Assembly (NCBI RefSeq): GCF_000143415.4
Contig: NW_003314265.1
Coordinates: 3,117,181-3,181,180 of the forward strand
DNA from: Selaginella moellendorffii
Lineage: Eukaryota; Plantae; Lycopodiophyta
Direction: 5' to 3'
Length of the DNA: 64,000 nucleotides
Position numbers and translations under genes: made by a program. Under the pieces are notes generated by a model. It was not told the origin of the DNA, ran no database searches, and saw only the letters and a list, made by a program, of their open reading frames with translations. The first letter of the stretch is position 1, and each line of letters opens with the position of its first letter. Positions 4,551 to 54,087 of this stretch are shown in pieces.

Positions 4551-5471
4551 TCGAATGCTGTGCGAGAAAAACTGCCGGGAGAGGAGAAAAACCCTCCGGA
4601 GTGAGTGATCTGGCGGAGCCTGGAATCTCGAGCAAAAAATTGGCTCTCCAGCAGAGTTCCTCGCGCTTCCCTGTGGGTGTGGAGAGAGAGAGAGAGAGAA
4701 AGAGAGACTTCAAAGTCTCTCTATCTGTCTCTCTCTCCCTTTTGTTCCTTCTGCCTGCCTTTGAATTGGCGATGGAAGACGCGCCAATCACATCAAGCGC
4801 ACAATGCCGATGCGTGTCATCACCGGCGACGACTCAAACCCGACCAAGAACAGTCGAGCGCTAGCGCACACCCCCTCCCTCCTCATAATCCTCTCAAATC
4901 CCGACCTCGCCGACAAACCTCCTGGATTGAATGGCGCGACGGCGTTGCGCAGCGCGCTACGCCGCTCCCTTCCAGCTGCGATCTCTCTCGATCGCGGCAA
5001 GAACCCCGTCGGAAAGCGATCAATCCCCTCCCCTGTTCTTCGTGCCTGTCCCAAAGGCAAAACCCTTGCCCTGAATGATCCGGTGGTTGGAATCGAACCG
5101 CTCACCGGGTCCTCCGTACAGCTACAAGCACCGTACGGCCGAGGGGATTAAAGGGTGAAAGCGCCATTTCCTTTTGCGGGTTGGTGCTGGCATTTTGTTG
5201 TTGGATAGACTGACGCCACAGGATGTAGCTCTCGCGCGATCTCGTCCGTCCAATCTCTGGCGCTCGCTATACTGGCTTACTGGCTACCTTTACACTTACA
5301 GCAGCCAGCAAGGCCAGAAGTGATTGATTTGTCTCTTTCAATTCAATTGCCTTTAGTTTTCATTTCACACTTTAGGGCTCCTTTAAAAGAAGATCGCATA
5401 TTCTACAGGCTCACTGTATATTCGTTTACCTTCGTCGTCAATGGTCCTAGGTTGAAGAAGCGCTGACCACC

Positions 5472-6620: not shown

Positions 6621-6820
6621 TTGTTTCGTGATCTCGCAAGGAAATAATTCTTTTGATTCGAAAGAAACTTCCGATGATTAAACGCAAGAACTTCATTGTC
6701 CTGCTAAAAGTCTTTATTTTGCGAAAGAAAGCTTCCAACTCTAGGTTCGCTCTATCATCTATCAAAGCCAAAAACGAAGTAAAAACGAAGTTCTATCACC
6801 TCGTATGTAGCTCTTGGAGC

Positions 6821-7543
6821 TTAGAGTGCCTTGAGGATCTCGTCGGCGCTGCTCACCGTGTAGGCACCACCCTCCTCGAGATTCAACACCTTGACGATCC
6901 CATCCTCGGCCAGCAGAGAGTAGCGCCGGGACCTCACTCCCAATCCCTCCACCTTGTCTGAAAGATCCACGGTCACTCCCAGATCGCGGGTAAACTTGCC
7001 ATTGCCGTCGGACAGCATGAGGATCTTGCCATTGACGCCCAGCGCCTCGCCCCACGACTTCATGACGAAGGCATCGTTCACGGAGACGCAGGCGATGGTG
7101 TCCACCCCCTTGGACTTGAGCTCGTCCGCCTTGTCGATGAATCCCGGGACGTGCTTGGAGGAGCAAGTGGGCGTGAAAGCTCCGGGCACCGCGAAGATCA
7201 CCACCTTCTTCTTGCTCGTCAGGTCCGACACCTTGATGCTCTGGATGGCGCCGCTCTCGTCGAAGTAGGAGAGCTCTCCATCGGGAATCCTCTCCCCGAC
7301 CGCGATGCTCGGCTTTGTGGTGGTGGTGCCGACCGCCGCGGCTGTGGCGAGGCTCCGCGATGGCGCCCTGGAGATGGTCGTCCCATAGACGGAGCTTCTA
7401 CTGTACAGGGATGGCGATGCCTGGAGCGCCGACGAGCGCTGCCTGAGGAATTGTCGCCCAGTGGTGAGGAGAGCGTGGCGGATTTGGGGCCTGGACGAGG
7501 ACGCGACGAGCGATGGCACGACGGCGGCAGCTAGCGACGCCAT
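6821..7543 (-). CDS. Type II peroxiredoxin, plastid PrxIIE-like, intronless
   Basis: [17 protein letters not shown] active-site motif, [13 protein letters not shown] and GLGVRSRRY. Ala/Ser/Arg-rich transit peptide from ATG 7543. Confidence 0.93.
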
Positions 7544-7822
7544 GGACAGATTATCGGAGATTCTGCGAAAGAATGTAGCAATCAATCGAGCGAACGAAGA
7601 CCTAAAAGCTTTTACCTCCGCCTCGCGAACGAACGATGTAGCCCTTGCGACGACGAAAAAGCCCAAGAACAGCGGAGGAGGAGAAATGTATGCGATGGGA
7701 ATATCTTCTCTACGTGGCCAAATTCAAGCGTGACACGTGGTAAACCCTCCCTTAGGGTTTATGCGGAGCGGCATTCTCAAGTCGATCCGGCATTTGGAGC
7801 GAGGGCGGCGATGAGCTAGCGA

Positions 7823-10800
7823 ATGCTGCGCAGTAAGTCTCGATTCTCAGGAATCATATCTTTGAGGAATCGATCTCCGGGACAAGATCTCTCCAATGCT
7901 GCCCACAGCACTGAATTTCATCATGGATCGTCTGTCGAGAGGCGGGCCGAAATATCGCCCGACGACTATGCGCAGCTCCTGGATGCCTGCGCGGCGAGCA
8001 AGGATCTCCACCAAGGTCTGCTGGTTCATGCTCGCATCTCCAACCTCGCGCTGGATTCTAACGTGTTCCTTGGAAACAGGCTTGTGGTCATGTATCTCGC
8101 CTGTGGTCGCCCCGACGAGGCCCAGCGCTCCTTCTACAAAATGCCCAACCGCGGCCCGGTTCCATGGACCAGCATGATAGGCACTCTCGCTCGAGAATTC
8201 CACTTCCACTCGGCTCTCTCGGTTTTTCACACCATGCTGCTGGAAGGAGTCCCTCCGGATAGTCCCACACTCGCGACGGTGATCAGCGTTTGCGGGAATC
8301 TGGAAGATCGAGGCCGAGCCTCTCGCTTACTCCACTCCATCGCCGTGGAGACTGGCAGGGACAGCGAGACCATCGTTGGAACTGCTCTCGTCTCAATGCA
8401 TCCGGATTTTGGCCATGCGCGGCAGGTTTTTGAGGGTGTTCTCGCCAAGGACGTGAGAACTTGGAATGCGATGATGGACGTTTATATGCGGAGGTCTGAC
8501 TACTCAGAAGTGCTGAGGCTCTTTCAGGAGATGGACGTGGAGCCGGACAGGTCGAGCTTTGTCAAGGCTCTCAACGCTTGCAGTGGTCTCGGGGATTTGG
8601 AACAGGGCCGGGTTCTTCACGAGCAGGCTATCGAGAAAGGATTCCATGCAGACGTCCGGGTGGAAGCAGCAATCTTTAGCCTCTACTCCAAGGGGCAGAA
8701 TCTGGACGTGCTGTTCAACTATGCTCCTCACCACGACAGCGTTGTCTTGTGGACAAGAAGGATGGCTGCGAGCACGAAGCAAGGACACAGTGCTACGACG
8801 ATGCAGTACTTCGGACTCATGCAGCTGGAGGGAATCAAGCCGGATAGAGTGACTCTGCTGACGATTGTTGACGCCTTGGATCGCTCTTGTTTCCTCGCCG
8901 TGGGCAGGATGGTCCATTCTCACGCTCGAGAACTGGGACTCGGGGGCCTCGCCAGCCTCATGAACGCTGTTATGAACATGTACGCGAGGTGTGGGAGCTT
9001 GGAAGAGGCAGTCCAAGTGTTTGCAGAAATTCGCAAGGATCTAATTTCCTGGAACACTATCATCGGAGCCTACGTACATCATGCACACTACGAAGAAGCT
9101 ATCAACTTGTTCCAACAGATGCAGCTCCAAGGTTTTCCACCGGACAAGATTACGTTGCTAGCGATGCTCAAGGTTTGTTCAAACTCAAAGTTCTTTCTCA
9201 AGAGCAAACTGATCCATGCTTGTGTTGTAGAGCTTGGCGACGAGGTAGAGCTAGCCGCTGCCATCATGGGAATGTATGGCAAGTGTGGAAACCTAGAAGC
9301 CTCAGCCACAGTATTTAGCAGCAGCGCCTTCCAGCAAAGTCCGGCGACTTGGAACTCGAGGTTAGCAGCACTGAGTCAAGAGGGACAGTCGACAGAAGCT
9401 CTTGTTCTCTACAGCTGTATGCTGCTCCAAGGTGTGATGCCTGACAGAGTTACCTTCCTTGCTCTTCTCGACGTAGCAGCCACTTTAGAAGCTCGACCGG
9501 TTGTGGAGGGACTACACGGCCATATAATCCAGCGTGGTTACGCTCGAGATACGTTCGTAGCCACTGCACTGCTCGACACTTACAGCAAGTGCGGAAGGCT
9601 GGAGGAGGCACGTTGCGTATTTGAAACACTCAGCCTTGGAGACCGCAACGTTGTTTGCTGGACTGCCATGGTCTCCGCCTACGGGCAGCACGGTTTCTTT
9701 GGAGAAGCGCTGCTGTATTTCCAACTCATGCAGCTCCAGGGTGAAGCTCCAAACAAGGTGACAATGGCTGCCGTGCTGACTGCTTGCTCGAAAGTGGAAC
9801 TTGAAGCTGATGAACTCAAGAGCGTGATGCGGGTATACCGGTGCTGCGTCGAACTTGGACATGATCGAGAGCTCGTGGTTGGAAATGCCGCTCTGAGCGT
9901 CCATGCCAAACTGGGAAACTTGAGGGAGGCCCGTGAGATCTTCTCTAGGATGTGGACACGCAACGTTGTCAGCTGGAACTCCATCCTGTCGGCCTGTGCT
10001 CAAGTCGGAGAAAGCAGGGAATGCCGGTGCCTGTTTCGACATATGCTGCTGGAGAGCGACTCCAGACCTGACAACTATACCTTCATCACCATCCTCGGCG
10101 TTTGCAAGCAGAGCCGAGAGGATCTAACTCATGGAAGGCTTCTTCATCAACTTGCCAGGGAGAGCAGCGGCAGCCTGGATCTTATCGTCGCGACAGCCTT
10201 GGTTCACATGTACTCGGAATGTGGAAGCCTCGAGGACGCGGCGACGACTTTCGGCACGATACAGCAGCCTGATGTGGTGTCTTGGAATGCGATGATCTCG
10301 GCCCTGTCGCACTATGGCGAGTTCCAGAGAGTTTTCGACTTGTTCCAGCGGATGAAAGACTCCAAAGTTGCTCCCGACAGCCTCACATTCGTTGCGGTCC
10401 TGAATGCATGCACCGCCAACTCGGAGCTCGAGCTTGGCCAACGTGTTTTCTCCGAGGCAGTCCGGGCAGGATTTGGAGCAGAAGTCGCAGCAGCTGGCAT
10501 CAACCTGTTTGGAAAGTGTGGAAAGCTGGAAGCCGCAGTGGAAACGTTCCTGACGCTAGTGCCACACGAGAAAAGCTTGCTGGCTTGGAACGGACTGGCC
10601 ACGGCGTTGGCTCACGGCGCAAGGCCGAGCGAAGTGATCCGAGTGCTCGAGTGCATGCGGCTATCGGGCATTGATCCGGACTTGGTGACTTTCGTGAGCG
10701 TTCTCTCCACACTGAGTCATGCCGGATTCGTGGAGGCCTGCTGCTACCAGTTGAGCTCCATGAGCACGGATCACGGCCTTACTCCATCGGCTACTCACTA

Positions 10801-11776: not shown

Positions 11777-14700
11777 ATGAGTGACGAGGCGCTGAAAGCC
11801 GATGTCGCCTCGTTCGCTGCGAATTTGGGGCTCGCGTCGTCGCAGGTAGGCTTCAATGATGCGGATTTCCGGAAGAAGGGGCCTCTGAAGCGCGGCACCG
11901 CCAGAAATCCCGACAAGGCCGAGAAATCCCAGAGGATCCCCAGGAAGAAGAAGGAAACCGGAGGTAACAGTAGAAGAGATGGTAGAAATGCGGGCTCTCA
12001 AGCTAGGAAATGGCCTCCACCGAAGCCAAGGGCCGAGGATTGGAAGAACGAGGCGAAGAAAGTAAATGTGAGCGTAGCCAAGGTCAGGTTTGGGAAGGAT
12101 GTCGTTCACTCGCTTTCGCGCTGGGCTGGAAGTGGCGAGAAATGGTACGAGACTGCCGCGGGGATTTCGTCGGCTATCCAGTTCGTGGAACCGGAGAAAG
12201 AGGTGGCTGATGGTTTTGTCCAGCTGAAACGCAAGGAGGCCGAGGCATTGCTCCAGCTGGTTGCGGTGGAGTTCGAGAGATCAAGGCGGAACAGCAGTGA
12301 CATGAGGATGATCCAATCGGCTCGCAGGTCGGGGACTTCTGGAGACAAAGTTGCTGCCATGACTATCTTGATCCAGGAAAATCCTGTGGCAAATCTTCAG
12401 ACGCTGGACTCGCTTCTCGGTAAGTATTGGTGCGAGTGTGTGTCTTGGGTTTGTGGTAACGCTTCATTTTCAGCAATGGTTACCTCGAAGGGAGGCAAAC
12501 GACACGCCTTGTCCGGGCTAGACGTCTTGAAAGAATTGTTTATCATGAGGTAGGCTTCCAAGTTTGATTGTTTTCCTCTTGAGATTTTAACTTAACCAGG
12601 CGTCAGCTTGTTGCCAGATCGGAAACTGACATATTTTGCTCGGCAACCGCTCGCGACTTTGCCTGAAACCAAAGAAGGTGCAATTCTCCTTTTGTGGTGG
12701 TTTTGGGAGGATTGCATTAAAGAGAGGTCTTCTGTGATTTTTCATCTGTTGCCCTGCTTGCTCACTGACTGATTGTTTTATCCAGGTACGAGAAGTTCGT
12801 GAATGCTGTTATAGAGGGAACCAAAGATGCGCTTGTCTACCTTAAGCTGAAAACAGTGAAGGTACTCGTTCGGTGAAATTCTACATTTTCCCGCTTAAGA
12901 ATAGTTTCCATAGACTCTGTACGAACTCTTGAAGGCGAAACCGGAACAAGAAAAGAAGCTGCTCTCAGCTGTCGTTAACAAGGTATTACTTACAGTTATT
13001 TCAGCTGCATTGTTTACGCTCGTTACGGGCAGCTTGGTGATCCTGAGAGAAAGGCTGCCTCCAATGCTGGTTATTTTCTGTCGTGCCTTTTGAAAGAACA
13101 TCCCAATATGACGGTAACTGATACCTCAGATTCATTTGAGCTAGTGGCTCATATTTTTGTTGCAGAAAGTAGTGTTGAACGAAGTGGAGGCATTTATGTT
13201 TCGGCCAAATCTTGGAATGCGCGCAATTTACTATGCGGTAATTTCTTGTTTGCTCATTTCGTTTTCAAATTGCAAAATGTTACTAATCTGTTCCATTTCC
13301 TAGTCCGTGTTCATGAACCAATTACGACTAAGCTATAAAGGCGAAGGCCCAAATCTTGCGAAACAACTGATCGACATTTATTTTGTAATGTTTAAGGTAT
13401 GCTTGGCTGTCTGTTTCTTCTTGAAAGGATCAATTTTGAATGCTTAGACCATCACCAGTCGTGGAATGAAGAAAGATACAAATCCGCAAAAGAAACCACG
13501 AAAGCAGTCTGAGGGCGCTACAAATGAAGATAATTCCAACAGCGAAGCTTCAGCTCTCGATTCGCGATTAATATCGTCGCTTTTGACAGTAAGTCTTGCT
13601 CACGGCATCCTTGTACCTTTTTTACTGTGTTCTGTAGGGAGTAAACAAGGCTTTTCGATTCGTAACCGAGGACAGCGCTGAAAACATTATTGAGGAACAC
13701 ACGCCGTCCTTGTTCCTTCTGGTAAGGATTTTCTTGTCGATCTAAATGGCGATCTAAATGGCGCCTTTTGTTTAGGCACACTCTACAAATTTTAACGTCG
13801 CAGTGCAAGCTCTTCTCCTTTTGCATCAGATTCTCGCTAAGCATCAAACCGTCAGCGAACGTTTCTACCGTGCTCTTTATTCTGTTATGCTTTCGCCTGC
13901 GCTTCTAAAATCTTCTAAGGTGAGATTCCTCGAGGAACTGTTGCTAGAGATGTTTTAATATGTGGCGTTTCAGATTGAGATGTATCTTGCTCTAGTTTTT
14001 AAGGTTCTGAGGTCCGACGTAAGCACGAGTCGGACTTGTGGATTTATAAAGCGTCTCATGCAGGTATCTTCAAGATAGTTTTTTTGTGGCGTTTTCAGGG
14101 TCTATTTCAGGTAGCTGTACACCAATCGCCCGAGCTAGGATGCGCTTTTCTGGTGCTTTTGTCAGAGGTGTTGAAGGCCAAACACATTCTATGGTGGGCG
14201 ATGCTCATTTTGTTTCAAAGACTTTCATGTTTTTAATGCTTTGTAATGTTTACAGGAACTTTATCTTAGAACCTGCAAGCCAAGGCGATGACGTCGAACA
14301 CTTCAAGGACGTGGAACTACCGGAGAACCAAGATGTGTCTGCGTTGCTGCCAGATGCTGCTAGCAAAGAGCCTTTGCGTGACGATAGCGATTCAGAGATC
14401 GATGTAGACGTTGAAATGGCAGCGGCGCTTGGAGAAGACGGTGACAGCGAGACTGAATTCAACAGAAAAGAAACTGGGAAGAAAATGCAGGCCATGCCTA
14501 CAGCTAAAGCTAGTCCGCTGCTGGCCGAAGCTGCGAAAAATACTCGTAACTCGAAAGGTTATGATCCTCGACATCGTGATCCACTCCACTGGTAAGTGTG
14601 GGTTTCTTAAAAAAAAATATATCTCACATCATGATCTGTGCAGTAAAGCCGATCAGACTTGTTGGTGGGAGCTTGCCATCCTCGCATCACACATTCATCC

Positions 14701-15567
14701 ATCCGTTTCAACAATGGCCAAAACGATTCTCTCAAATGCCGCGGTTGTTTACTCCGGTGACCCAATTCAGGACCTTGCCTTCACCGCTTTTCTGGATCGT
14801 TTCGCTGAAAGGAAGCCGAAAGCTCGCAAGATCGGGATTGACAGTACCAAAAAGGTGACCAAATTTTTTTCTACTTCTTTTCACTCATGAAGCTTTGATT
14901 CCAGGAGGCTGTTTCAAATGCGCCCATGGGCATGAAGTTGGCGTCCTTGGCGGAAGACGACGTTGCTCCATCGGATCTGATCTTCCACAGGTTTTACCGC
15001 GCAAAGGCCGAGGCTATGGGCAAACGCGTGAAGAAGAAAAAGAAAGCGCTCGAGGACTTTGATGACGACATGGTTGGAAGTGACGAAGAACTTAGCAGCG
15101 ATGATGAAGAAGGCGGTGATGAAGATGAAGAAGGTGGTGATGCTGGTTTGGTAGACGACGAAGGCGATTCGGAAGAGGAAGAAATCGATAGACTGCTCGA
15201 TGAAAATGACTCGGAGGGTGCAGAGTTTGATCTGCAGGACGACGACGATGATTCATCCGACGACGACGAGAAGCTACCCGAGGTTCTGGTTGTAGACAAG
15301 AAAAACAGTAAGAAGAAGAAGAAGAAGAAGAGCGCAAAGAACGTACCCGACGATGAAGATGAGAGCTCCGATGATGACGAGTTCGATGAGATCTTCCTGG
15401 AGGATACGAAGGACAAGACGAAGAACAAGAACAGAAGGGGCGCGAAGAACAGGACACAAGATGGATCAACGGGGTCAAAGAGAAAATCTCTATATGCAAG
15501 TGCCGAGGATTACACTCACATCTTGGAAGGAGAAGGAAGCATGAACAAAAAGAAAAGCAAACACTAG
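11777..15567 (+). CDS. NOC1/MAK21/CEBPZ (CBF domain) ribosome biogenesis protein, many short introns
   Basis: Motifs DVASFAANLGL, SGTSGDKVAAM, KPEQEKKLL, GYDPRHRDP, WWELAILASHIHPSVSTMA, YSGDPIQDLAFTAFLDRF, DLIFHRFY; acidic tail; SLYASAEDY near the C-terminus. Confidence 0.92.
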
Positions 15568-15630
15568 ACATTGAGAATGAAAGCTTCCTTTTTCTCTCTC
15601 CCGTGTACCTGGTTGTGGAGGAGGGAGCTT

Positions 15631-16803
15631 CTAGTACGGGATGTAACGTACTTCCTGCTCCAACTGGATGCCACTCTCGGCTCTCACGCGGTCCTTGATC
15701 ACCGAGATGAGGGACAAGACGTCGCTGGCTTTGGCGCCGCCCGTGTTGATCAAGAAGTTGGCGTGAAGCTCGGACACCTTTGCTCCTCCAATCCTCAGCC
15801 CTTTGAGCCCCACGGCCTCTATCAAGGCTCCCGCTGATTGGCACCCCTTGCCTGGATTTCGAAACACACACCCTGCGCTTCGCTCGTTCACTGGCTGGGT
15901 TTGCTTTCTCCTGCCGGAAGGTCGTGATGTTAGATGGAAGTGATGGGAGAAGGCTGAGCTCTCACCTGGCGAGATAGTCTCTTTGCCTGTCGCGAGAGAG
16001 AGGGCACGGCTGGAGCTGGAAGGTGGCGAAGAGAATGGCTCCAAGGTCTGGCATTCCCTGGAATGGAGACTTCCGGTAGCTGCAGGCAAGCTCTCCTTGT
16101 TTCTTCAGCAGCTCGCGTGTTTGTCCGTTCGTGTCGACGAACTCCACCGCCTCGAGAACTTCTATTGTTTCCTAGGCGCAACAAGTTGATGCTCGGGTTT
16201 TACTTACTTGAAAACATGGAAGGATCAAAGACATACCTGGCCATCAGCTCCAGCATTCATAAACACTGCCCCGCCTACAGTCCCAGGAATGCCAGACGCA
16301 AACTCGAGCCCCCCGAAACCCTGCTTTGACGTGTGAATGCCCAGGAGATTGAAAGGATAGCCACTGCCAACTCGGTAGCGTCCACAGCCATTCTCGTGCA
16401 TGTCGTTGATCCGACTGAGGATTACACAGCCGTCGAATCCGCGATCGTCGAAGAGGCAATTGGATCCTTTTCCCAGAGCCAGGAACTTGAGGTTGTGCTC
16501 GCGGCAGTGCCTGTGAAGGAAATGCTAAACTACGACAGAGACAGTGAAAAAAAAAACAACATACCTTATAGAAGAAACGAGCTGCTCTCTGTTTCGGACT
16601 TCTACAAAGAGCCGCGCAGCTCCGCCAATGCCCCAAGTCGATAGTTCACTAAGAAGCTTGCCTCTCACAAACTCAGGAGCCTGATCCTCGGAGCCAAAAC
16701 TCGGTGAACAAGATGAGCAGAGTGATCCCACCTTTTTCCTTGTCTTGTCACCAGCACCCAGAAATGTAGGAGGCGGAGCCGACTGCCTAGCATTCACTGC
16801 CAT
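15631..16803 (-). CDS. murB: UDP-N-acetylenolpyruvoylglucosamine reductase (plastid peptidoglycan pathway), 4 exons
   Basis: STWGIGGAA, LGKGSNCLFDDRGFDGCVI, GLEFASGIPGTVGGAVFMNAGA, YRKSPF, SAGCVFRNP, GGAKVSELHANFLIN and LEQEV form the MurB motif set, interrupted by spliceosomal introns. Confidence 0.93.
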
Positions 16804-16869
16804 TGCCAAAACCCTATAGCAACTCCCTCTAACTCTACCATACTGTACAAGCGCCTCCCATCTGTTTCC

Positions 16870-18274
16870 TCAAGCCATAACTCCGTCCTCAGTGCCATGT
16901 ACTCGCAACCGATACAAGCAAGTGTGCGTCGGACTGCCGTAGTTTGAGAGGACGTGCAACCGGATCATGTTGACTGAGGATGTCGGCTTGTCGGAAAGAT
17001 CGAATGTCTGGATGCTTCCTTTGTCGAGATCATACGTGAACCTCCCAAGAGAAGTAACGTTCCTGGCATCGAGAACGTCGTCTTTCACAGTACGCCAAGC
17101 AAAGATCTCGAAATCTCTGGGTGCACTTCTTGGGTCATAGGCTACTTTCTGAGAAAGCCAGCTGTTAGACCGAGAAACACAAAGAGAAAATCAACTTTTG
17201 CGTTACCTTAGACAAGTGCTCCAATGTCACCGCTTCTGGAAAAATGTGAGCCCGCAGCCTGATCTCCACTGTCACATTGCTGCCTTTGAGAGGCAGACAC
17301 TGCCCGGGCTCTCCAAAGCTGGGCCGGAGAAGCCTATCAGCCATCGGGTGCCTCCGAAAAACACCCGGGAGGACATGAATCCCCAGCCTGGTCCAGTGCA
17401 GCCCCTGGAAGTAGCCGTCCGAGTGATGAACCACCTTTCCTCCACCACTTTCCAGAGCAAAATCCACCCTCCCGATCCCATCCGCGGCATGCGTCTCCAG
17501 TTCACTCTGCACCACCTTTCTCGCGGCTGCGCGCACGTCGTCCAGGCTAATGGCCTTGTCACTCCCTTCTCGAGCGCGCTGGTCCATGGCCGACTTGACG
17601 AGCTCCAAAGTCTCCTCCCTGGACAAGAGCTCCTGGCTGTAGAGCATCTTGAGCGAGTTGTCCACCTTTTGGACCTGAGCCTTGATGCTTCCAATGTCCT
17701 TCTCGAAGCCCCGGGTCCTCTCCGACAGCTTCTCCTCCAGCTCCGATCGAACGCCCGACACTTCCTTGCCGATCTTGTCGTCCACCACATCCAGCTGCAC
17801 TTGCAACCACTTGCTCGTCTTCCTCATGAAATCCTCCACCTCCGAGACCTTCGCTGCCGTGGGCGTCTCTGGGAGAAGCTGCCCTTGATCGCTCTCGCGG
17901 AGGCTCAACAGCGTGGTGCTTATCCCCGCAGCCGCGAAGAGGAGGAGAAACACCTTGGCGGCGGAGAAAAACTCCCAGCTCTTGCGGATCTCCTGGCAAG
18001 AATCCTGGAACTCTACCTGAAGGTTCTTCTTAGCGGCAGGAGCCGCCGCGTCGGCAGCGGCATTCTTCTCCTTGAGCGCCTTCGCCCTGGACGCGGCCAC
18101 AGTCCTGGTCGGGAGCGCCTCCTTGGTAGCAAAATTGAATGAAGGAAGAGGAAGATTGGTAGCGGCAGCAACAGCAGCACGCTGGGCCTCGATCGCCGCC
18201 GCCGCCTCCGTGTCCGCCGCGGCAGCTGGCTTGGTCCGCCGCCTGCTCTGCCTCGCGGCGCCAGCGCCAGCCAT
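16870..18274 (-). CDS. C-terminal SUN-domain nuclear envelope protein (SUN1/2-like), one coding intron
   Basis: TM segment and coiled coil, then HAADGIGRVDFALESGGGKVV, PSFGEPGQCLPLKG, AVTLEHLSK/KVAYDPRSAPRD, SNYGSPTHTCLYRLRVHG. Confidence 0.92.
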
Positions 18275-18462
18275 AATCACTCCTTTCCAGGCCAGAACCG
18301 ATCAAGAAACGCACTCACCGCTGGGCGCCCTGGACGATACTTCCTCCTCGCTCTCTTAAAGAACCCTATGTTTCGTTTTCCCACCAAATCCCGGCCAATT
18401 CAAATAACAAAATAGAAACCGGCGTTTCATATCCACCCGAAGCATATTCCCTGGCTCTCTCC

Positions 18463-19698
18463 TTACATCCGCCGCTCTAGTTCCGTACTGGCCACATTGT
18501 ATGGCCACTGGTGGTGGAGCTGGTCGATCATGGACGCCGGCGCCATCGCCGGCCGCCCCCCACCGTCGATCGCGCCACGCCTTTCCAGCATCAGACGGCT
18601 GGTGTGCTGGTGCCACATGCGCATGAATCTCCGCCACCTCAGCATCTCCGCCAGCGCCACGTCGGTGCCAGGCTGGCGCAGCCGGACCGAGTCGGCCCGG
18701 CGGGCGCGCGGCCGGGCCGGGATGTGCTGCGCGAATATGTTGGCAGATGGGCAGGATCGCTCCACGCTGGCGCCGCCGTCGCCGCCGCGGCCGTAGATGG
18801 GTATGACGTCAGCGTCCGAGACGGCGCCCTTGCAGACCGGGCACTCGTCGTTGTGGGAGTGGACGTGGAGCCACTGGTAGAGGCAGGGCCAGCAAAAGAG
18901 GTGGCCGCAGCTCGTCACCACCGGCTCGCTCGCCACATCGAAGCAAACGTTGCAATCGAAGAAGAACTCCTTCCCGGATCCGGATCGCTGCTGCTGTTGC
19001 TCTTGATCGTCGCAGAGTAGCTTGGCCTGGCTTTGATCTTCATCCTGCTGCTGCTGCTGGTGCTGCTGGGGATTCAAATCCAGCGAAGAAGCTGACGCGC
19101 TGTTCTTCTTCCTCGGGAGATATTGAGACTTTGAGGACGATGACTGTGGAGCTTCAGTGGCAGCCACCGCCGCCACTGCTGCTGCCGGTGTCGCTCTGCC
19201 GCTTGAATTCAATCTGGTGGTCGTAGCAGCGCTGCTGCTCCTGGCGCCCCACCAATCGTGCTCGTGATCTCGATCGCCATCTTCTTGAGGGTGCTGCTCT
19301 TCTCCCTCGAGCAATGCCGCTTCCAGCTCGTCGTCTTCCTCGCGGAGAAAGTGATCGTGGAGGAGCGGCGAGAGATCCAGGTCGAGCTCCTGCCCAGAGT
19401 CAACGTCGGAGAAATCCATCCCCCAGAAGGGCGAGTGGTGTTCGTGGTGGTAGTCGTGGTAGTGGTACGGGTTGCTAAAGTCGATCTCCCCTGGCGATGG
19501 CGGGCTGGGGCTGGGCGGATACTCGAGGAAGAACCTCGTCCAGATCGGCTGTGGCGTCGGCAGAGGCTGGAAGTTAAACATGCCGTGGCCCATGAGCTCC
19601 GATCGCGATGGCTGCCACAGTGGATATGGCGGCGTCGCGGCCGGATGCACGGCTGCTGGGGGCGGCGCTAGGTGGAGATTGAGATCCAGCGAGTCCAT
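18463..19698 (-). CDS. C3HC4 RING E3 ubiquitin ligase, RMA1/RNF5-like
   Basis: [32 protein letters not shown]...ECPVCKG...IPIYGRG...IPARPRA. A probable 5' leader intron (gtaag..ttgcag, about 19803-19753) makes ATG 19698 the likely start. Confidence 0.88.
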
Positions 19699-19864
19699 GG
19701 CGGCGAAATGCGGCAATCCATCGCGTCCTCGGTAGTAGTGTGGGTGATGATCCTGCAAGAAGATCGGATTGGAGCTACTGGATAGGAAATTTACGGAGCT
19801 TACCATCAAGAAATCTTGGCGCTTCGCTTACGAGAACCCTAGTGTCGCGCTTGCGAGAGATTCT

Positions 19865-20059
19865 TTACCAGAATGGAGGCCGACTGCCGCCGCCGCCGCT
19901 CAATCTTCCAAACAGGAGCTTTGCCGAGAGGAATGCCGCGCCTGCGTAGAGCCCCCAAACGAAGAGCGAGAATGTGAGCTTGGCGGTCACGTACACGGCG
20001 CCCGCGGCGATCCCCGACGCGACCGTCGCGACGAGCTTGTTCCACAGTAGCAGGCCCAT
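19865..20059 (-). CDS. Putative 64-aa protein with two hydrophobic helices
   Basis: ATG-initiated ORF MGLLLWNKLVATVASGIAAGAVYVTAKLTFSLFVWGLYAGAAFLSAKLLFGR..., preceded by a TAGGGTTC leader motif at 20128-20121. No family recognised. Confidence 0.45.
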   Translation of the reverse strand: MGLLLWNKLVATVASGIAAGAVYVTAKLTFSLFVWGLYAGAAFLSAKLLFGRLSGGGGSRPPFW

Positions 20060-20258
20060 TCTGGCCGCAAAATCCCCCAGGCCTCGATCATCTCCCGCTC
20101 CTCTCAGGAAGAAGAACTAAGAACCCTAATTCATCGCTCGCGCAAGAGCTGCCCCAAAGCGCTCGTGTCCCTTCGTGGCGTGTCCAACAACGGCCCCGAT
20201 ATGTTTGAAACCGACGACTGTGATTGACCTAGGGTTCTTGCGATGCCCGGGCTCCGCG

Positions 20259-21998
20259 ATGGCGCTGCCAGACACTCTAATCTCCTGCAATGCGCTCCTC
20301 GCCCAGTCCGCGCAATCGGGCAACGCGCGCCTATCCAAGAAAATCTTCGATTCGATGCCGTATTGGAGCCTGCTGTCCTTCACCCCGTTGATCAACGCAC
20401 TCGCGCAGGACGGCCAGATCGATCTCGCCAAGGCGCTGTTCGATGGAATGCCGGAGAGGAATCTCATCATCTGGACATCCATGACCGCGGCATTTGCTCG
20501 GAATGGGCATCTGGATCAAGCGGAGGAGCTCTTTGCCACAGCTCCACTGCGCGATATGATCTATTTCTCCACGCTGATAGAGGTGTACGGGCATCACGGC
20601 CAGATCTCTAGGGCGAAGCGCGTCTTCGACGAGATGCCCGAGAGGGATCTTATCGCGTGGTCGCTAATGCTGGCGGTATATACCCAAAATGGGCTTCTTG
20701 CTCTAGCGAGGGGTCTGTTTGAACAGATGCCCGCCAGGGACATGGTGGCGTGGACGTCCATGCTGGCGGGCTACTGCCACGACGACAACCTGGTAAGAGC
20801 AAAGTTAATCTTTGATCGGATGCCCCAGCGCAACCTGGTAGCGTGGACGCTCCTCATTGCTGCAAATGCCCACCATGGTGACTCCAACGTGGCAAAGCGG
20901 CTGTTTGATCAGATGCCGGAGCAAAACGTGGTGGCGTGGAACGCCCTGCTGGCGGCCAACGTGGCAGCCGACTGCGCCGACGAGGCCGAGAGGCTCTTCC
21001 GCGCGATGCCACATCACAGCCTCAGCTCGTTCAACGCCATGCTGGCGTGCCACGCACACAGCGGCTTGCCCAACGCGGCACTGCGGCTGTTCAACTCGAT
21101 GCCAGAGCACGATGTTATCTCGTACACGTCACTGCTGACGGCATATGCCAATGTTGGGCATTTGGATCAGGCGCAGAGAATATTCGACAGGATGGAGTGG
21201 CGGAGCTTGACGACGTGGAGTTCCATGTTGACCGCATATGCCACGTCCGGGCATCTGGAGGAGGCTGTCCAGTTATTTAATGAAATGCCGCAGACGATAC
21301 TGCCAGCTTGGAACACGATTCTGAGTGTGTATGCCAAGTGGCGCCAACTCGACCAGGCAACACAGACGTTCCATTCCATGCCGGAGAGGGACGCTACGAC
21401 GTGGGCGTTAATGCTGGGAGCAATTGCCCAGGCCGGGCATCTTGACGTGGCGGAGAAGCTGCTGAGTCGGATGCCACATCAACACCTAGTTGGCCGCTCC
21501 GTGCTCCTGGCAGCGTTTGCTCACAACAGGGAGCTTTACGAGTCGAAGCTACTCTTTGACGAGATCAAGCTGGCGGAGCAAAAGATCGACCATGTTTGCT
21601 TCCTTTCGATCCTGGCGGCTTGCACTCACCACGGCAAAGTTCGCGATGGAAGATCGTATTTCCTGTCCATGGTTGGAGACTTTGAATTGAGAGCCACCAA
21701 GCAGCATTACTGCTGCCTTCTCGATCTGCTGGGACGAGCTGGATACCTGACTGATGCCAGTGATTTGATCCAAAGCATGCCTTTTGAGGCCGACGTTGTG
21801 GACTGGAGCTGCTTCCTTGGAGCTTGCTCGAGTCACAACAGCGTGGAGTTTGGGAGGGAGGCCGCGGCTCTGGCACTGGAAAAGGATCCCAAGAACGTAG
21901 CGGCCTACATCCTCCTCTCGAACATTAACCAGCAGCAGCAGAGAACTCCTGTAGCTCCTGTTCCTGGATTACGCATCACTCCTCGACGCAAATCATGA
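20259..21998 (+). CDS. PPR protein rich in short (S/SS-type) repeats with E domain, no DYW domain
   Basis: ~31-aa periodic LFD.MP.R....W motifs; ends HYCCLLDLLGRAG...AAYILLSNI. First ATG at 20259. Confidence 0.92.
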   Translation: MALPDTLISCNALLAQSAQSGNARLSKKIFDSMPYWSLLSFTPLINALAQDGQIDLAKALFDGMPERNLIIWTSMTAAFARNGHLDQAEELFATAPLRDMIYFSTLIEVYGHHGQISRAKRVFDEMPERDLIAWSLMLAVYTQNGLLALARGLFEQMPARDMVAWTSMLAGYCHDDNLVRAKLIFDRMPQRNLVAWTLLIAANAHHGDSNVAKRLFDQMPEQNVVAWNALLAANVAADCADEAERLFRAMPHHSLSSFNAMLACHAHSGLPNAALRLFNSMPEHDVISYTSLLTAYANVGHLDQAQRIFDRMEWRSLTTWSSMLTAYATSGHLEEAVQLFNEMPQTILPAWNTILSVYAKWRQLDQATQTFHSMPERDATTWALMLGAIAQAGHLDVAEKLLSRMPHQHLVGRSVLLAAFAHNRELYESKLLFDEIKLAEQKIDHVCFLSILAACTHHGKVRDGRSYFLSMVGDFELRATKQHYCCLLDLLGRAGYLTDASDLIQSMPFEADVVDWSCFLGACSSHNSVEFGREAAALALEKDPKNVAAYILLSNINQQQQRTPVAPVPGLRITPRRKS

Positions 21999-26664: not shown

Positions 26665-29048
26665 CGGTCTTCCCAGAGAAGCAATGTTACGTTGCAGCAT
26701 CCTCAGGCTGGCGCGCGAGAATTCTCTTCACTGCTCGCTTCCCATGCTCCGAGTCTCCATGGATAGCGCACGCGTCTAGGAAGCTCGTCCAGAGAACGAC
26801 GAGAGGGTCATCACCACTGCCACCGCTACTTCGGGATGATGAAAGCTCCTGCCTCCTGTTTCTAAGTTTGACGGCCACCATCTCCTCGGCCTCCTCCAGA
26901 AATCCAGCCCGGCTCGTGCTCAAGGAGCTCAACACGTAGCAGGCGCATGACTCAGAGTGGAGAGAAAAAGTCACCGAGTCCGGATCAATGCCCCACAGCT
27001 GCATGCACTCGAGCACTCGACCGAGTTCGCTAGATCTTTCAGTCAACGCCGTCGCCAGTCCGTTCCAAGCCAGCAAGCTTTTTTCTTGCGGCACTAGCGT
27101 CAGGAACGTTTCCACTGCGGCGCTTTCCACACTTTTCAAACAGGTTGATGCCGGCTGCTGCGACTTCTGCTCCAAATCCTGCCCTCGGAGAAAACATGTT
27201 GGCCAAGCTCGAGCTCCGAGTTGGCGGTGCATGCATTCAGGACCGCAACGAATGTGAGGCTGTCGGGAGCAACTTTGGAGTCTTTCATCCGCTGGAACAA
27301 GTCGAAAACTCTCTGGAACTCGCCATAGTGCGACAGGGCCGAGATCATCGTAGTCCAAGACACCACATCGGGCTGCTGTATCGTGCCAAAAGTCATCACC
27401 GCGTCCTCGAGGCTTCCACATTCCGAGTACATGTGAACGAAGGCTGTCGCGACGAGAAGAGCCAGGCTGCTGCTATTCTCCCTGGCAAGTTGATGGAGGA
27501 GCCTTCCATGGCTTAGATCCTCTCGGCTCTGCTTGCAAACGCCGAGGATAGTGACGAAGGTATACTTGTCAGGTCTGGAGTCGCCAGCAGCATATCTCGG
27601 AACAGGCACCGGCATTCTCTGCTTTCTCCGACTTGACCACAGGCCGACAGGATGGACAACGTTGCGAGTCCACATCCTAGAGAAGACCTCACAGGCCTTT
27701 CCCAGCTTGGCATGGACGCTCAGAGCGGCATTTCCAACCACGAGCTCTCTCGATCATGTCCAAGTTCGACGCAGCGCCGGTATACCCGCATCCCGCTCTT
27801 GAGTTCATCAGTTCAAGTTCCACTTTCGAGCAAGCAGGCAGCACGGCAGGCATTGTCACCTTGTTTGGAGCTTCATCCTGGAGCTGCATGAGTTGGAAGT
27901 ACTGCAGCGCTTCTCCAAAGAAACCCGTGCTGCCTGTAGGCGGAGACCATGGCAGTGTAGGCGGAGACCATGGCAGTCCAGCAAACAACGTTGTGTTCCC
28001 CAAGGCTGAGTGTGGACCTCCTACACCGGTGCCAGGTGCTCTACCACTGAGCTACCTGCCCTGGTTGTGTGTATGTTCAGCTTAATTCTAACACTCCCCC
28101 CTAAGTTGAATACGCCACACATCCTTGCCAGTTCATGCTTACCACACACCATCCAACCATAGCTCCAATACCATGTTGGAAAATGGATTTGGACAGGCCA
28201 AGGATTGAACCCAGGACCTCCTACACCGGTGCCACTGAGCTACCTGCCCTGGTTATGTGCATGTTCAGCTTAGTTCTAACACGTGCCTCCTCCAGCCTTC
28301 CGCACTTGCTGTAAGTGTTGAGCAGCGCAGTGTCTACAAACGTATATCGAGCGTAATTGCGCTGGATTATATGGCCGTGGAGTTCCTCCACAACCGGTCG
28401 AGCTTCTAAATTGGCTGCTACGTCGAGAAGAGCAAAGAAGGTACTCTGTCAGACATCACACCTTGGGGCATACAGCTGTAGAGAACAAGAGCTTTTGTCG
28501 ACGGCTAAGTGCTGCTAACCTCGAGTTCCAAGTCGCCGGACTTTGCTGGAAGGCGCTGCTGCTAAATACTGTGGCTGAGGCTTCTAGGTTTCCACACTTG
28601 CCATACATTACCATGATGGCAGCGGCTAGCTCTTCCTCGTCGCCAAGCTCTACAACACAAACATGGATCAGTTTGCTTTGGAGAAAGAACTTTGGATTTG
28701 AACAAACCTTGAGCATTGCTAGCAACGTAATCTTGTCCGTTAGAAAACCTTGGAGCTGCATTTGTTGGAACAAGTTGATAGCTTGCAAAATAGGCTCCGA
28801 TGATAGTGTTCCAGGAAACTAGATCCCTGCTGCAAACACTCGGACTGCCTCTTCCAAGCTCCCAGACCTCGAGTACATGCTCATGACAGCGTTCATGAGG
28901 CTGGTGAGGCCTCCAAGTCCCAGTTCTCGAGCGTGATCCTGCCAAAGCCGAGGAAAGAAGACCGATCCAAGGTGTCGACAACCGTTAGCAGAGTCACTCT
29001 ATCCGGCTTGATTCCCTCCAACTGCATTGTCGTTGCACTGTGTCCTTG
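26665..29048 (-). pseudogene. 5'-truncated, frameshifted inverted copy of PPR gene 7823-11089
   Basis: Near-identical peptides (RRQELSSSRSSGGSGDDPLVVLWTSFL, FQRVFDLFQRMKDSKVAPDSLTF, AINLFQQMQLQGF) in shifting frames. Contains a 21-bp tandem duplication near 27936-27977 and a TRIM insertion. Homology stops at parent position ~8780. Confidence 0.92.
28011..28281 (-). mobile_element. TRIM (miniature LTR retrotransposon) with tRNA-like LTRs
   Basis: On the minus strand: 108-bp LTR TGTTAG...CCAACA (28281-28174), PBS TGGTATTGGAGC (28173-28162, 10/12 to the iMet PBS), PPT AGGGGGGAG (28102-28094), then a second truncated LTR (28093-~28014). Absent from the parent PPR gene. Confidence 0.85.
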
Positions 29049-49347: not shown

Positions 49348-49430
49348 CCGACCTTAGCTCAGTTGGTAGAGCGGAGGACTGTAGTTTCTCAGAAATCCTT
49401 AGGTCGCTGGTTCGATTCCGGCAGGTCGGA
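49348..49430 (+). tRNA. tRNA-Tyr(GUA) with a 10-nt canonical intron (49385-49394)
   Basis: CCGACCTTAGCTCAGTTGGTAGAGCGGAGGACTGTAG[tttctcagaa]ATCCTTAGGTCGCTGGTTCGATTCCGGCAGGTCGGA, followed by a T-run at 49440-49447. Confidence 0.97.
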
Positions 49431-49447
49431 CGAGATTCCTTTTTTTT

Positions 49448-52774: not shown

Positions 52775-53872
52775 GCTCTCGTGGCCTAATGGATAAGGCA
52801 TTTGACTTCTAATCAAGGGATTGTGGGTTCGATGCAACGTGTATGTACATTTCTCCAAGTCCCTTAGGGATCAAAACAACATTGAGAGCGCACTCTCGAA
52901 GAAACTAGTGAAACTATGAGCGCGAACGCCCGGCGCTGCTCTTGGGCCGTCCACCTCCCAAGTGACTCCACTGCGGAGCTTGAAGCCACCTGCTTCGCCT
53001 CGCCACTCTTGGGCCGTCCACCTCCCAAGTGACTCCACTGCGGAGCTTGAAGCCACCTGCTTCGCCTCGCCACTCCTCCACTCGGTCACAATGATGTCAA
53101 GCCGGACGAACACCATGTCGATCTAGCTCGACGTCGTCGCAGCCAAGCAGTCCAACTCGAGCACGATGACCCGGCATCGCTCATAGGTCACTCGCCTCCA
53201 AGGTGATTCCACTGCACAAGCTGAAGCCACCTGTTACGCCCCAAGACGTGATGCTGTGTCTTGGAGCGCCTACCTCCCCAGTGTACTTCCAGCACTAAGT
53301 CAGTGCCCATTGCGAACAAACTCCAAGGCGTAGAACAAGCAAGGTGTGAGCCTCCTCCAGCTCTAGACTAGAGCGTGCTACCTTGCCTCCCACACTAGAC
53401 AAGTGCGCTGGCCCCCTTCAATGATATACGAGCCCCCGTTGCCGGCATCGCGACAATCACAAGACTTGCAAGCCTCCGCGAACCTCCTCAAAGGACTAGC
53501 CCTGAAGCAAGAACCATGTGGGATCCCCTCCGCGAGCAAACCAACTCGGCCATCCGCCACTGGCCCCCTTTGTGACAGCACTTCCCTGTCACTAGATCCA
53601 AAAATGCGCCCATAGTGTCTTCCACGTCCATCCACCGCGGACACTTCGCTATGTCGGGATGACGTCCCGAACTGTCCTCCACCAGTCAACAAAGTTCCCA
53701 TGACTTGGTCGTGTTTCCACGACTCAAGTCGCCAAGAACCTCCGACACATGCAGCTTCACGCTCTCCGTACCTCAGTCGCCACCTTGCATGGCCCGACCT
53801 AAGGCGAGAAATCCCGCTCGAAGCTGCGAGACCAACAACCGGGGATTGTGGGTTCGAGTCCCACCGAGAGTG
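52775..53872 (+). tRNA. tRNA-Arg(UCU) gene interrupted by a 1-kb insertion (5' part 52775-52832, 3' part 53842-53872)
   Basis: Collapsing the repeat gives GCTCTCG TG GCC TAATGGATAA GGC A TTTGA CTTCTAA TCAAG GGATT GTGGG TTCGAGT CCCAC CGAGAGT G, with all stems pairing. T-run terminator from 53876. Confidence 0.9.
52833..53841. mobile_element. 1009-bp insertion of unknown class with a 16-bp flanking direct repeat
   Basis: GGGATTGTGGGTTCGA at 52817-52832 and 53842-53857. No TIR, poly(A) tail or recognisable ORF. Internal 67-bp tandem repeat. Confidence 0.75.
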
Positions 53873-54087
53873 ATCTTTTTTTTGTTCTTTATTGCCACGT
53901 GGCAGAATATTAGAGGCTTATTTTTAGGGCGTCACGTCATTGTCGGGCACGCCATTGTTGTTCAAGCACGCGATCGCGCGCTGGTGGATCGTAAGTGCTA
54001 GATAGCCTAGATCTTAAGATTGTAGCGGCCCGGCCGCGGCTGGGGAGTAAGGAGAGGATTTTTGGGCGCTAGGGGTTTTCGGGGATC

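What the first reader, a model, noticed from the sequence alone, without database searches (positions are those of the whole stretch)
52775..53883. tRNA-Arg(UCU) gene split by a 1-kb element with an exact 16-bp duplication: candidate tRNA-targeting mobile element
Seen: the tRNA breaks after T-loop position 58 and resumes 1009 bp later. GGGATTGTGGGTTCGA (positions 43-58) is present on both sides, and both tRNA parts still pair, implying a recent event. The insert has no TIRs, LTRs, poly(A) or recognisable ORF. Known: long TSDs are typical of target-primed non-LTR retrotransposition; small-RNA-gene-specific elements exist in animals and protists (Dada, Tx1- and NeSL-clade families); bacterial integrative elements use tRNA-derived cores. 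I know of no such element in land plants. Inference: a truncated or non-autonomous site-specific element. Recombination between the 16-mers would restore the tRNA precisely.
Basis: partly seen in the sequence, partly recalled or inferred. Interest (0 to 1): 0.85.

Follow-up and report, generated by a model that had tools for sequence, protein, structure and literature searches.

The report
LINE passenger copy splitting tRNA-Arg gene
In one of the two parental genome copies of the spikemoss Selaginella moellendorffii, a tRNA-Arg gene is split by a 1-kb shortened copy of a non-coding jumping element that shares its tail with a LINE; the family also lands repeatedly at the same short motif (G-A/T-T-C-G) outside tRNA genes, so it is site-selective but not tRNA-only.

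Summary
A perfect tRNA-Arg(UCU) gene is split after T-loop nucleotide 58 by 1009 bp flanked by an exact 16-bp duplication. The allelic scaffold of the same public assembly carries the empty site: an intact gene with one copy of the 16-mer.

I could identify the insert. It is the 3'-terminal 941 nt, plus a private 67-bp duplication, of a ~1.7-kb non-coding retroposon ("P"). Its sense strand is antisense to the tRNA.

A 20-kb stretch of scaffold GL377641.1 holds eight more P copies (96-97% identical) and a 5'-truncated L1-type LINE (zf-RVT ORF2 end) that has the same 3' tail. They are stacked head to tail at two other sites. One site lies just downstream of a hammerhead ribozyme hit, in what looks like a Penelope-like element.

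Every copy has the same 3' end, a variable 5' end and a 16-nt duplication. Every 3' junction follows G(A/T)TCG. These are marks of target-primed reverse transcription by a sequence-selective LINE.

The tRNA T-loop (GGTTCGA) fits that motif, but none of the other copies I could reach sits in a tRNA gene. "Truncated, non-autonomous, site-selective" is supported; "tRNA-targeting" is not shown.

This scan had already noted the family on other DNA (s1-419997, s1-385051, s1-410701, s1-346902).

The parts
52775..52832 (+). 5' part of tRNA-Arg(UCU), nucleotides 1-58 (acceptor, D arm, anticodon arm, variable loop, 5' T-stem and T-loop up to A58)
   Evidence: ARAGORN on the joined sequence. Identical to the intact allele at L001 5493-5565.
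52817..52832 (+). Left copy of the 16-bp target-site duplication GGGATTGTGGGTTCGA (tRNA nucleotides 43-58). Its 3' end is the inferred first nick, the primer for reverse transcription.
   Evidence: The empty allele has a single copy.
52833..53841 (-). 5'-truncated copy of the ~1.7-kb non-coding retroposon P (positions 744-1684 of the 1684-nt copy P5). The element's sense strand is the window's minus strand.
   Evidence: 96-97% identical to seven of the P copies in L006. The left end is the end shared by all copies. The right end is where this copy is cut short, because other copies continue beyond it.
52833..52892 (-). Conserved 3' tail of the element (small UCCC/GGGA stem-loop, then AAUGUACAUACACGUUGCA), shared with the L1-type LINE fragment in L006.
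   Evidence: Alignment A1.
52939..53075 (.). 67-bp tandem duplication (2.0 copies, 100% identical) found only in this copy. A diverged third unit at 53175-53241 belongs to the family sequence.
   Evidence: The L006 copies carry one unit; 68 alignment columns are window-only.
53842..53857 (+). Right copy of the 16-bp target-site duplication.
53858..53872 (+). 3' part of tRNA-Arg(UCU), nucleotides 59-73.
53876..53883 (+). T8 run, the Pol III terminator of the tRNA gene.
   Evidence: Read from the sequence. Also present in the empty allele.

Best explanation
The insert is a 5'-truncated copy of a ~1.7-kb non-coding, non-autonomous retroposon (P) of Selaginella moellendorffii. It was most likely copied into the tRNA-Arg(UCU) gene by target-primed reverse transcription carried out by an L1-type LINE that shares P's 3' tail.

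Inferred steps: the LINE endonuclease nicked the tRNA-sense strand in the T-loop, right after GGTTCG(A). That 3'-OH primed cDNA synthesis from the 3' end of P RNA, so P lies antisense to the tRNA. Reverse transcription or joining stopped 941 nt in. The second strand was cut 16 nt upstream, which gave the 16-bp duplication.

Shown: the event is present in only one of the two haplotypes of the assembly. The family is sequence-selective, with G(A/T)TCG at the nick and a fixed 16-nt stagger, and it re-inserts many times at the same sites. The tRNA T-loop (the B box) matches this motif and is one of its targets, not its only one.
For: Filled and empty alleles: the window is identical to GL377569.1. 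GL377656.1 has the intact gene with one 16-mer. The public assembly holds two haplotypes (PMC3095285).

Family: a translated frame of the insert hit one Selaginella gene model, P0124. Its locus L006 holds eight P copies; the seven compared are 96-97% identical to the insert, and the eighth is seen only at its 5' end.

TPRT hallmarks: all copies have the same 3' end (alignment A1). Their 5' ends vary, or are near full length with 4-8 extra nucleotides. Flanking repeats are 16 nt: six exact CGATCTCGCCGGATTT and three exact CGAACAGCCAAAAGCC.

Selectivity: all three target sites read G(A/T)TCG on the primed strand at the junction. By my own estimate, two further sites matching by chance is about (1/512)^2.

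Partner: inside one stack, between the same 16-mers, lies a 1761-bp LINE fragment whose 529-codon ORF carries zf-RVT (E=4e-9). Its last ~60 nt resemble P's tail, about 84% identical.

Other mechanisms: no TIR, LTR, poly(A) or coding capacity.
Against: Only one locus with other copies could be reached, so genome-wide copy number and target spectrum are unknown.

The LINE fragment lacks its endonuclease and RT core, so neither its clade (L1 or Tx1) nor its activity could be tested.

G(A/T)TCG is too short to explain repeated hits at two particular sites. The extra determinant is inferred, not shown. Candidates are annealing of a read-through 3' flank, longer recognition, or local re-insertion.

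The window copy has a diverged 3' end: 91-92% identity over the last 175 nt against about 97.5% elsewhere, ending GTTGCA rather than GTTTAG. Its donor is therefore not among the copies seen.

An older, 70%-identical relative of the tail in L006 (ending at 2299) is not followed by CGA.

Confidence: 0.8

Rival explanations
1. tRNA genes are a dedicated, regular target. A tail-variant subfamily of P and its LINE homes to the tRNA T-loop or B box, and the window copy is a typical member of it.
For: The insertion is exactly at GGTTCGA| of a real, otherwise perfect tRNA gene. The window copy has a distinct 3' tail module, as expected if tails go with targets. Site ii in L006 (GGCTTTTGGCTGTTCG) loosely resembles the tRNA 16-mer, about 11 of 16 positions with gaps. 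Two unchecked earlier notes of this scan report related LINE fragments and a non-coding passenger landing right after GTTCGA of a tRNA-like motif (s1-410701, s1-346902).
Against: This is the only insertion in a real tRNA gene that I could see. The eight other P copies and the LINE fragment lie at non-tRNA sites, and Rfam finds no tRNA in L006. The neighbouring tRNA-Tyr gene with GGTTCGA is unoccupied in both haplotypes.
Confidence: 0.25
2. An accidental landing of an ordinary, non-selective retroposon in a tRNA gene. The shared motif would be coincidence.
For: A whole-genome scan will find a few young insertions in tRNA genes by chance. An old relative of the tail in L006 sits at a site without the motif.
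Against: Three independent sites share G(A/T)TCG at the junction and a 16-nt duplication. Two of the sites were hit repeatedly: six and three exact copies of the respective 16-mers flank the stacked copies. This is not expected from random integration.
Confidence: 0.06
3. Capture of P cDNA or DNA as filler during repair of a double-strand break in the tRNA gene, without a LINE endonuclease.
For: P has no poly(A) tail, and captured retroelement cDNA at breaks is known in other organisms (my own knowledge).
Against: A clean 16-bp duplication of the same length as at the other P sites. The insert's left end is exactly the family's 3' terminus. The junction motif is shared. Break repair would give arbitrary ends and usually deletions.
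Confidence: 0.03
4. Site-specific recombination of a circular element through a 16-bp core shared with the tRNA (integrase- or Crypton-like).
For: A single instance of direct repeats cannot tell a recombination core from a target duplication.
Against: The 16-nt repeats differ completely between the three sites, so they derive from the targets and not from the element. No recombinase gene is present. Variable 5' truncation is not expected from recombination.
Confidence: 0.01

Closest known systems
Sequence-specific APE-type LINEs of animals: R1 in 28S rDNA, and Tx1-clade families that target snRNA, 5S rRNA, tRNA arrays or other transposons (Kojima & Fujiwara 2004, cited in PMC8869645; Tx1L endonuclease, Christensen et al. 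2000)
   Same: Insertion at one exact nucleotide of a defined motif. Fixed-length duplications of more than 10 bp. No poly(A) tail. Head-to-tail stacks, because each insertion recreates the target.
   Different: The host is a land plant. The only readable protein part is a plant L1-type zf-RVT C-terminus, and the endonuclease was not seen. At least three different target contexts share only a short core, so specificity looks looser. A 2025 review of where plant transposons sit (PMC12477314), searched for 'tRNA', 'non-LTR', 'Selaginella' and 'rDNA', showed no such plant LINE in the passages returned.
SINE/LINE pairs that share a 3' tail (the stringent recognition type)
   Same: A non-coding element with a defined 5' end and the same ~60-nt 3' tail (with a small stem-loop) as a LINE in the same stack, inserted with the same duplication length.
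   Different: P is 1.7 kb long and has no tRNA, 5S or 7SL-like Pol III head (no such Rfam match in L006), so it is not a classical SINE. How it is transcribed is unknown.
Dada DNA transposons (PMC3706591, PMC8869645)
   Same: They land inside tRNA and snRNA genes at fixed positions.
   Different: From my own knowledge, Dada elements are DNA transposons with a transposase, terminal inverted repeats and short duplications. Here there are no inverted repeats, the duplication is 16 bp, and copies are 5'-truncated.
Retroelements that target the neighbourhood of tRNA genes (yeast Ty3, Dictyostelium TRE5-A; my own knowledge)
   Same: Association with Pol III genes.
   Different: Those insert next to tRNA genes by binding Pol III factors and leave the gene intact. 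Here the gene itself is cut at a sequence motif, and non-tRNA sites are used as well.
Earlier notes of this scan on the same genome: s1-419997 (1.7-kb non-coding element in the Penelope-like element's end), s1-385051 (LINE in the same tail), s1-410701 and s1-346902 (LINEs and a passenger landing after GTTCGA)
   Same: L006 shows what the first two describe, and I checked it myself: a 1.7-kb non-coding element and a LINE stacked at one spot beside a hammerhead hit. The window's junction, GGTTCGA|, is what the last two describe.
   Different: I could not compare sequences with those notes. s1-419997 gives a 19-20-bp duplication where I count 16 exact plus 0-8 extra nucleotides. New here are a hit in a working tRNA gene, an empty allele, and one family spanning the two kinds of target.

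Membership tests
Insertion made by LINE machinery (target-primed reverse transcription) | Target-site duplication, proven by an empty site | tested here: met
   16-bp duplication. The empty allele in GL377656.1 has one copy.
Insertion made by LINE machinery (target-primed reverse transcription) | Constant 3' end and variable 5' truncation among copies | tested here: met
   Seven P 3' ends and the LINE's align to the base (A1). The 5' ends fall at different element positions or are near full length with extra nucleotides.
Insertion made by LINE machinery (target-primed reverse transcription) | Absence of terminal inverted repeats and LTRs | tested here: met
Insertion made by LINE machinery (target-primed reverse transcription) | Poly(A) or simple-repeat 3' tail (typical of L1, not of R1- or Tx1-like site-specific LINEs) | tested here: not met
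   The tail ends ...ACACGUUGCA, with no A run.
Non-autonomous partner of a LINE (SINE-like passenger) | No coding capacity | tested here: met
   For the insert: no Pfam match and no credible relative. The one protein hit, P0124, is a gene model laid over another P copy. ORFs inside the P copies of L006 that I scanned had no Pfam match.
Non-autonomous partner of a LINE (SINE-like passenger) | 3' tail shared with an autonomous LINE | tested here: met
   The LINE fragment at L006 15830-17590 ends with the same tail, about 84% identical over ~62 nt, and has the same junction.
Non-autonomous partner of a LINE (SINE-like passenger) | Head derived from a Pol III-transcribed RNA (classical SINE) | tested here: not met
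   No tRNA, 5S or 7SL match in the P copies at E<=1. The unit is 1684 nt long.
Site-specific LINE system | Independent insertions at the same nucleotide of the same target sequence | tested here: met
   Six and three exact copies of two 16-mers flank stacked copies. All junctions follow G(A/T)TCG.
tRNA-gene-specific element | Most copies sit in tRNA genes at one position | tested here: not met
   One of nine P copies seen is in a tRNA gene; the other eight and the LINE fragment are not. L006 has no tRNA. The sample is only one locus, so this is weak.
L1-superfamily LINE (the presumed partner) | ORF2 with APE endonuclease, RT, and a C-terminal zinc-binding domain | tested here: inconclusive
   zf-RVT PF13966 at E=4e-9. 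The endonuclease and RT core are missing from this 5'-truncated copy.
Dada or other TIR DNA transposon | Terminal inverted repeats and a transposase or related copies | tested here: not met

The most novel reading that the evidence does not exclude
Selaginella harbours an L1-type LINE and passenger system whose endonuclease reads G(A/T)TCG. One tail-variant lineage of it uses the tRNA T-loop (B box) as a regular landing site, while sister lineages use the end of a Penelope-like element. This would be the first tRNA-gene-cutting, sequence-specific non-LTR system in a land plant, caught here as a filled and empty allele pair.
Probability: 0.3. Interest if true: 0.75.

Novelty: new variant of a known kind. 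Interest (0 to 1): 0.6.

Why it matters
Sequence-specific LINEs are textbook cases in animals (R1, R2, the Tx1 clade), but the papers I searched do not describe them in land plants.

This locus offers three things. The first is a clean filled and empty allele pair in the sequenced plant itself, which shows the exact nick site and the 16-nt stagger. The second is a link between an insertion in a working tRNA gene and a family otherwise seen stacked at the end of a Penelope-like element. The third is a short, testable target core, G(A/T)TCG.

A plant endonuclease with a fixed nick site and fixed stagger, together with a 1.7-kb RNA that it mobilises, would be a useful system for studying target choice by LINEs. 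It would also help explain how such elements move between "safe" multicopy targets.

The insertion destroys one tRNA-Arg(UCU) allele. That is probably harmless, because the other allele is intact.

Tried and rejected
**Sequencing runs.** No place was reported as human-like. I later searched the tRNA 16-mer only inside the window.

**Protein searches with the insert.**
- The 107-aa ORF gave nothing.
- The 153-codon frame, searched against 1.8 billion representatives, gave only a spurious repeat protein.
- Pfam on ten frames gave nothing.
- Only the third frame, 52874-53122 on the minus strand, found the gene model P0124 that led to L006.

**DNA and RNA searches.**
- Two exact-pattern scans of metagenome contigs found nothing.
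- Rfam on the insert found nothing credible.
- Folding the insert's ends showed no significant structure.

**Random sampling.** Three other Selaginella loci (L002-L004, 73 kb) held no copy and no LINE.

**Exact-product look-ups.** Three failed.

**Earlier findings.** The search of earlier findings by sequence was blank.

**Readings rejected.**
- tRNA intron: the position is wrong, and a duplication is present.
- Helitron: the ends do not fit.
- Solo LTR or MULE: the duplication length is wrong and there are no inverted repeats.
- Organellar DNA insertion: it is a nuclear repeat family.
- Assembly artefact: a precise duplication and an allelic empty site argue against it.
- Remnant of LINE ORF2 coding sequence in the insert: there is no homology, and the open frame is not significant.

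Full report
**1. The observation**

- The exact 16-mer GGGATTGTGGGTTCGA occurs at 52817-52832 and 53842-53857. No other match with up to three mismatches exists in the window.
- Joining 52775-52832 to 53858-53872 gives a 73-nt tRNA-Arg(tct) with a perfect cloverleaf. The break lies after nucleotide 58 of the T-loop (TTCGA|GT), and the 16-mer is nucleotides 43-58.
- A T8 terminator follows at 53876-53883.
- As it stands, ARAGORN does not call the gene, and Rfam scores the 5' part below its gathering cut-off.
- The 1009-bp insert (52833-53841) has 57% G+C and is C-rich on the plus strand.
- It has no inverted or long terminal repeats, no A or T tail and no polyadenylation signal.
- It has no ORF with a Pfam match or a credible protein relative. 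Its longest open frame is not unusual (p=0.27).
- It contains a perfect 67-bp tandem duplication at 52939-53075 and a diverged third unit.

**2. Organism and the empty site**

- A PPR gene 4.5 kb downstream matches Selaginella moellendorffii proteins at 99%.
- The window is identical to scaffold GL377569.1 of assembly GCA_000143415.2. The insert is at record positions 3170013-3171021.
- A second scaffold of the same assembly, GL377656.1 (locus L001), is collinear with the window: 98.98% identity over 5.6 kb on the left and 98.05% over 8.6 kb on the right.
- The two alignment blocks overlap in L001 by exactly 16 bp. L001 carries an intact tRNA-Arg(tct) identical to the joined window sequence, and also the neighbouring tRNA-Tyr.
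- The published assembly holds two haplotypes of the sequenced plant (PMC3095285).
- The insertion therefore looks heterozygous, with a true target-site duplication. It lies in the 396-bp spacer between an MCM8-like gene and a syntaxin gene.

**3. What the insert is**

Most searches with the insert failed (see Tried and rejected). One translated frame (52874-53122, minus strand) hit a single Selaginella gene model, P0124, at 87% identity. Its locus L006 (GL377641.1:875975-896348; the scaffold is 914,710 bp long) turned out to be full of copies of the insert.
- *Orientation.* In L006 the copies lie on the plus strand, which corresponds to the window's minus strand.
- *Identity.* The seven copies compared are 96-97% identical to the insert and 97-99% identical to each other.
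- *The 67-bp unit.* They carry a single 67-bp unit, so the duplication is private to the window copy.
- *3' end.* All copies end at the same nucleotide that forms the insert's left edge (alignment A1).
- *5' end.* At the insert's right edge, several L006 copies simply continue.
- *Unit length and truncation.* Near-full-length copies start at a common 5' end (...AAAAGCCCTAAGTTGTTTGAGG...), preceded by 4-8 extra nucleotides. Copy P5 is 1684 nt long. The window insert corresponds to its positions 744-1684.
- *Conclusion.* The insert is a 5'-truncated copy of a ~1.7-kb element that I call P. P has no tRNA, 5S or 7SL-like match, and the ORFs scanned within its copies have no Pfam match.

**4. How the family inserts**

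L006 holds two head-to-tail stacks.

*Stack i (14008-20277 and beyond)* reads, in order:
- flank
- P4 (902 nt)
- P3 (871 nt)
- a LINE fragment (1761 nt)
- P2 (1660 nt)
- P1 (977 nt)
- a further P copy that runs off the locus

Each unit is separated from the next by an exact copy of CGATCTCGCCGGATTT; there are six copies with no mismatch.

*Stack ii (5301-10427)* holds three P copies between exact copies of CGAACAGCCAAAAGCC. Three copies of that 16-mer are visible, and an assembly gap may hide a fourth.

Each insertion has therefore duplicated 16 nt of its target and recreated the site for the next insertion.

On the strand that would prime reverse transcription, the three known sites read as follows:

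| Site | Sequence at the junction |
|---|---|
| Window, tRNA-Arg | ...GGGATTGTGGGTTCG(A)\| |
| Stack ii | ...GGCTTTTGGCTGTTCG\| |
| Stack i | ...AAATCCGGCGAGATCG\| |

All three show G(A/T)TCG at the junction and a 16-nt stagger. By my own estimate, two further sites matching this degenerate 5-mer by chance is about 4 in a million.

These features are the signature of target-primed reverse transcription by a sequence-selective endonuclease:
- a constant 3' end;
- a variable 5' end;
- extra 5' nucleotides;
- a fixed-length duplication;
- repeated use of the same site.

That mechanism is an inference from this anatomy. No enzyme was tested.

**5. The likely partner**

- The 1761-bp unit in stack i (15830-17590) sits between the same 16-mers.
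- It carries a 529-codon ORF with the zinc-binding zf-RVT domain of plant L1-type ORF2 proteins (E=4e-9).
- It ends with the same tail as P: a small UCCC/GGGA stem-loop followed by AAUGUACAUACACGUU. The tails are about 84% identical over 62 nt.
- It is 5'-truncated, so its endonuclease and RT core could not be seen, and PDB sequences gave no match.
- P therefore behaves as a long, non-coding passenger of this LINE lineage.

**6. The other targets**

- Stack i begins about 115 nt downstream of a hammerhead ribozyme hit (HH9, 40.8 bits, E=2e-7, below the gathering score) at 13827-13894.
- A telomere-like CTAGGGTTAGGGTAG lies at 13808-13822.
- An RT-like ORF (12109-12993) has no Pfam match, but its nearest Atlas clusters are rotifer retroelement proteins.
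- Together these point to the 3' end of a Penelope-like element. Such elements are known at Selaginella chromosome ends (Gladyshev & Arkhipova 2007, as cited in PMC12477314). I did not test membership further.
- The host sequence of stack ii is A-rich and unidentified. No tRNA is present in L006.

**7. Reading of the tRNA hit**

- The tRNA T-loop (B box) GGTTCGA matches the nick core, and the insertion has the family's usual 16-nt stagger. It is a regular product of the system, not a repair accident.
- Whether tRNA genes are a favoured target is open. This is the only real tRNA hit I could see.
- The tRNA-Tyr gene 3.4 kb away, which also has GGTTCGA, is untouched in both haplotypes.
- The window copy is a slight outgroup. 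Its last 175 nt are only 91-92% identical to the L006 copies, against about 97.5% for the rest, and its extreme tail (ACACGTTGCA) is closer to the LINE's (ACACGTTCAG) than to the other P tails (A1).
- This suggests a tail-variant subfamily whose donor lies elsewhere.
- *One possible explanation (inference only).* P RNA may include some of the donor's downstream flank. That flank could then pair with the nicked target. Donors beginning CGAAC..., as in stack ii, could pair with any GTTCG site, including tRNA T-loops.

**8. Relation to earlier notes of this scan (leads, not evidence)**

- s1-410701 and s1-346902 report LINEs and a passenger landing right after GTTCGA of a tRNA-like motif. They left open whether real tRNA genes are hit. 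They made me test the antisense orientation.
- s1-419997 and s1-385051 describe a 1.7-kb non-coding element and a LINE at one spot of the Penelope-like element's end. L006 shows this independently.
- New here: the insertion in a working tRNA gene, the empty allele, and the link between the two kinds of target through one family.

**9. Literature**

Searches for Selaginella with non-LTR, target-specific, tRNA or Tx1 terms found no description of such a plant element. A 2025 review on where plant transposons sit mentioned none in the passages returned. Site-specific LINEs and tRNA-targeting Dada transposons are described from animals and protists (PMC8869645).

**10. Limits**

- The family was seen at one further locus only.
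- No contig looked human.

Noticed in passing
window 28011-28282: A miniature LTR-type element with two ~75-85-nt direct repeats that carry an antisense tRNA-like sequence (weak Rfam tRNA hits on the minus strand). It fits the Helenus family that Kojima (2024, PMC10886601) described from S. moellendorffii, with a 120-bp LTR and an 85-bp internal part.
   Followed up: partly
L006 13808-14023 and 12109-12993: The target of stack i appears to be the 3' end of a Penelope-like element. Evidence: a hammerhead HH9-like ribozyme (E=2e-7, below gathering), a telomere-like CTAGGGTTAGGGTAG, and an RT-like ORF whose nearest Atlas clusters are rotifer retroelement proteins. A GTGCCGC/GCGGCAC inverted repeat brackets the insertion point only if the first bases of the adjoining LINE fragment are counted.
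   Followed up: partly
L006 5367-5471, 8771-8871, 17632-17736: The 5' region of every long P copy folds into a long GA/CT-rich hairpin that gives weak miRNA-precursor-like Rfam hits (MIR156 at about 31 bits, far below the gathering score of 62). This is probably just a hairpin, but it is conserved among copies.
   Followed up: no
L006 2160-2299 and about 2900-3700: An older relative of the P/LINE 3' tail, 70% identical, ends at 2299 at a site that lacks the CGA junction motif. Downstream, by eye, lies a decayed LINE endonuclease-like stretch (GDFN motif).
   Followed up: no
window 52833-53841, plus strand: The plus strand of the insert has no run of four or more T. Pol III starting at the split tRNA gene's A box could therefore read through the whole antisense insert to the original T8 terminator. 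About 1.4 such runs would be expected by chance, so this is not significant.
   Followed up: partly
window 49348-49431 and L001 2075-2158: An intron-containing tRNA-Tyr(GTA) gene lies 3.4 kb upstream of the tRNA-Arg gene. It is intact in both haplotypes although its T-loop also reads GGTTCGA.
   Followed up: yes
window 62435 onward and L001 14123 onward; L001 18487-21039: Collinearity between the two haplotypes ends at window 62435. L001 then has a stretch with long overlapping open frames on both strands, most likely a low-complexity or tandem repeat.
   Followed up: no
L006 5301-5330: The last 7 nt of the stack-ii target 16-mer (AAAAGCC) equal the first 7 nt of full-length P. This may be microhomology used at 5' joining, or chance.
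   Followed up: no
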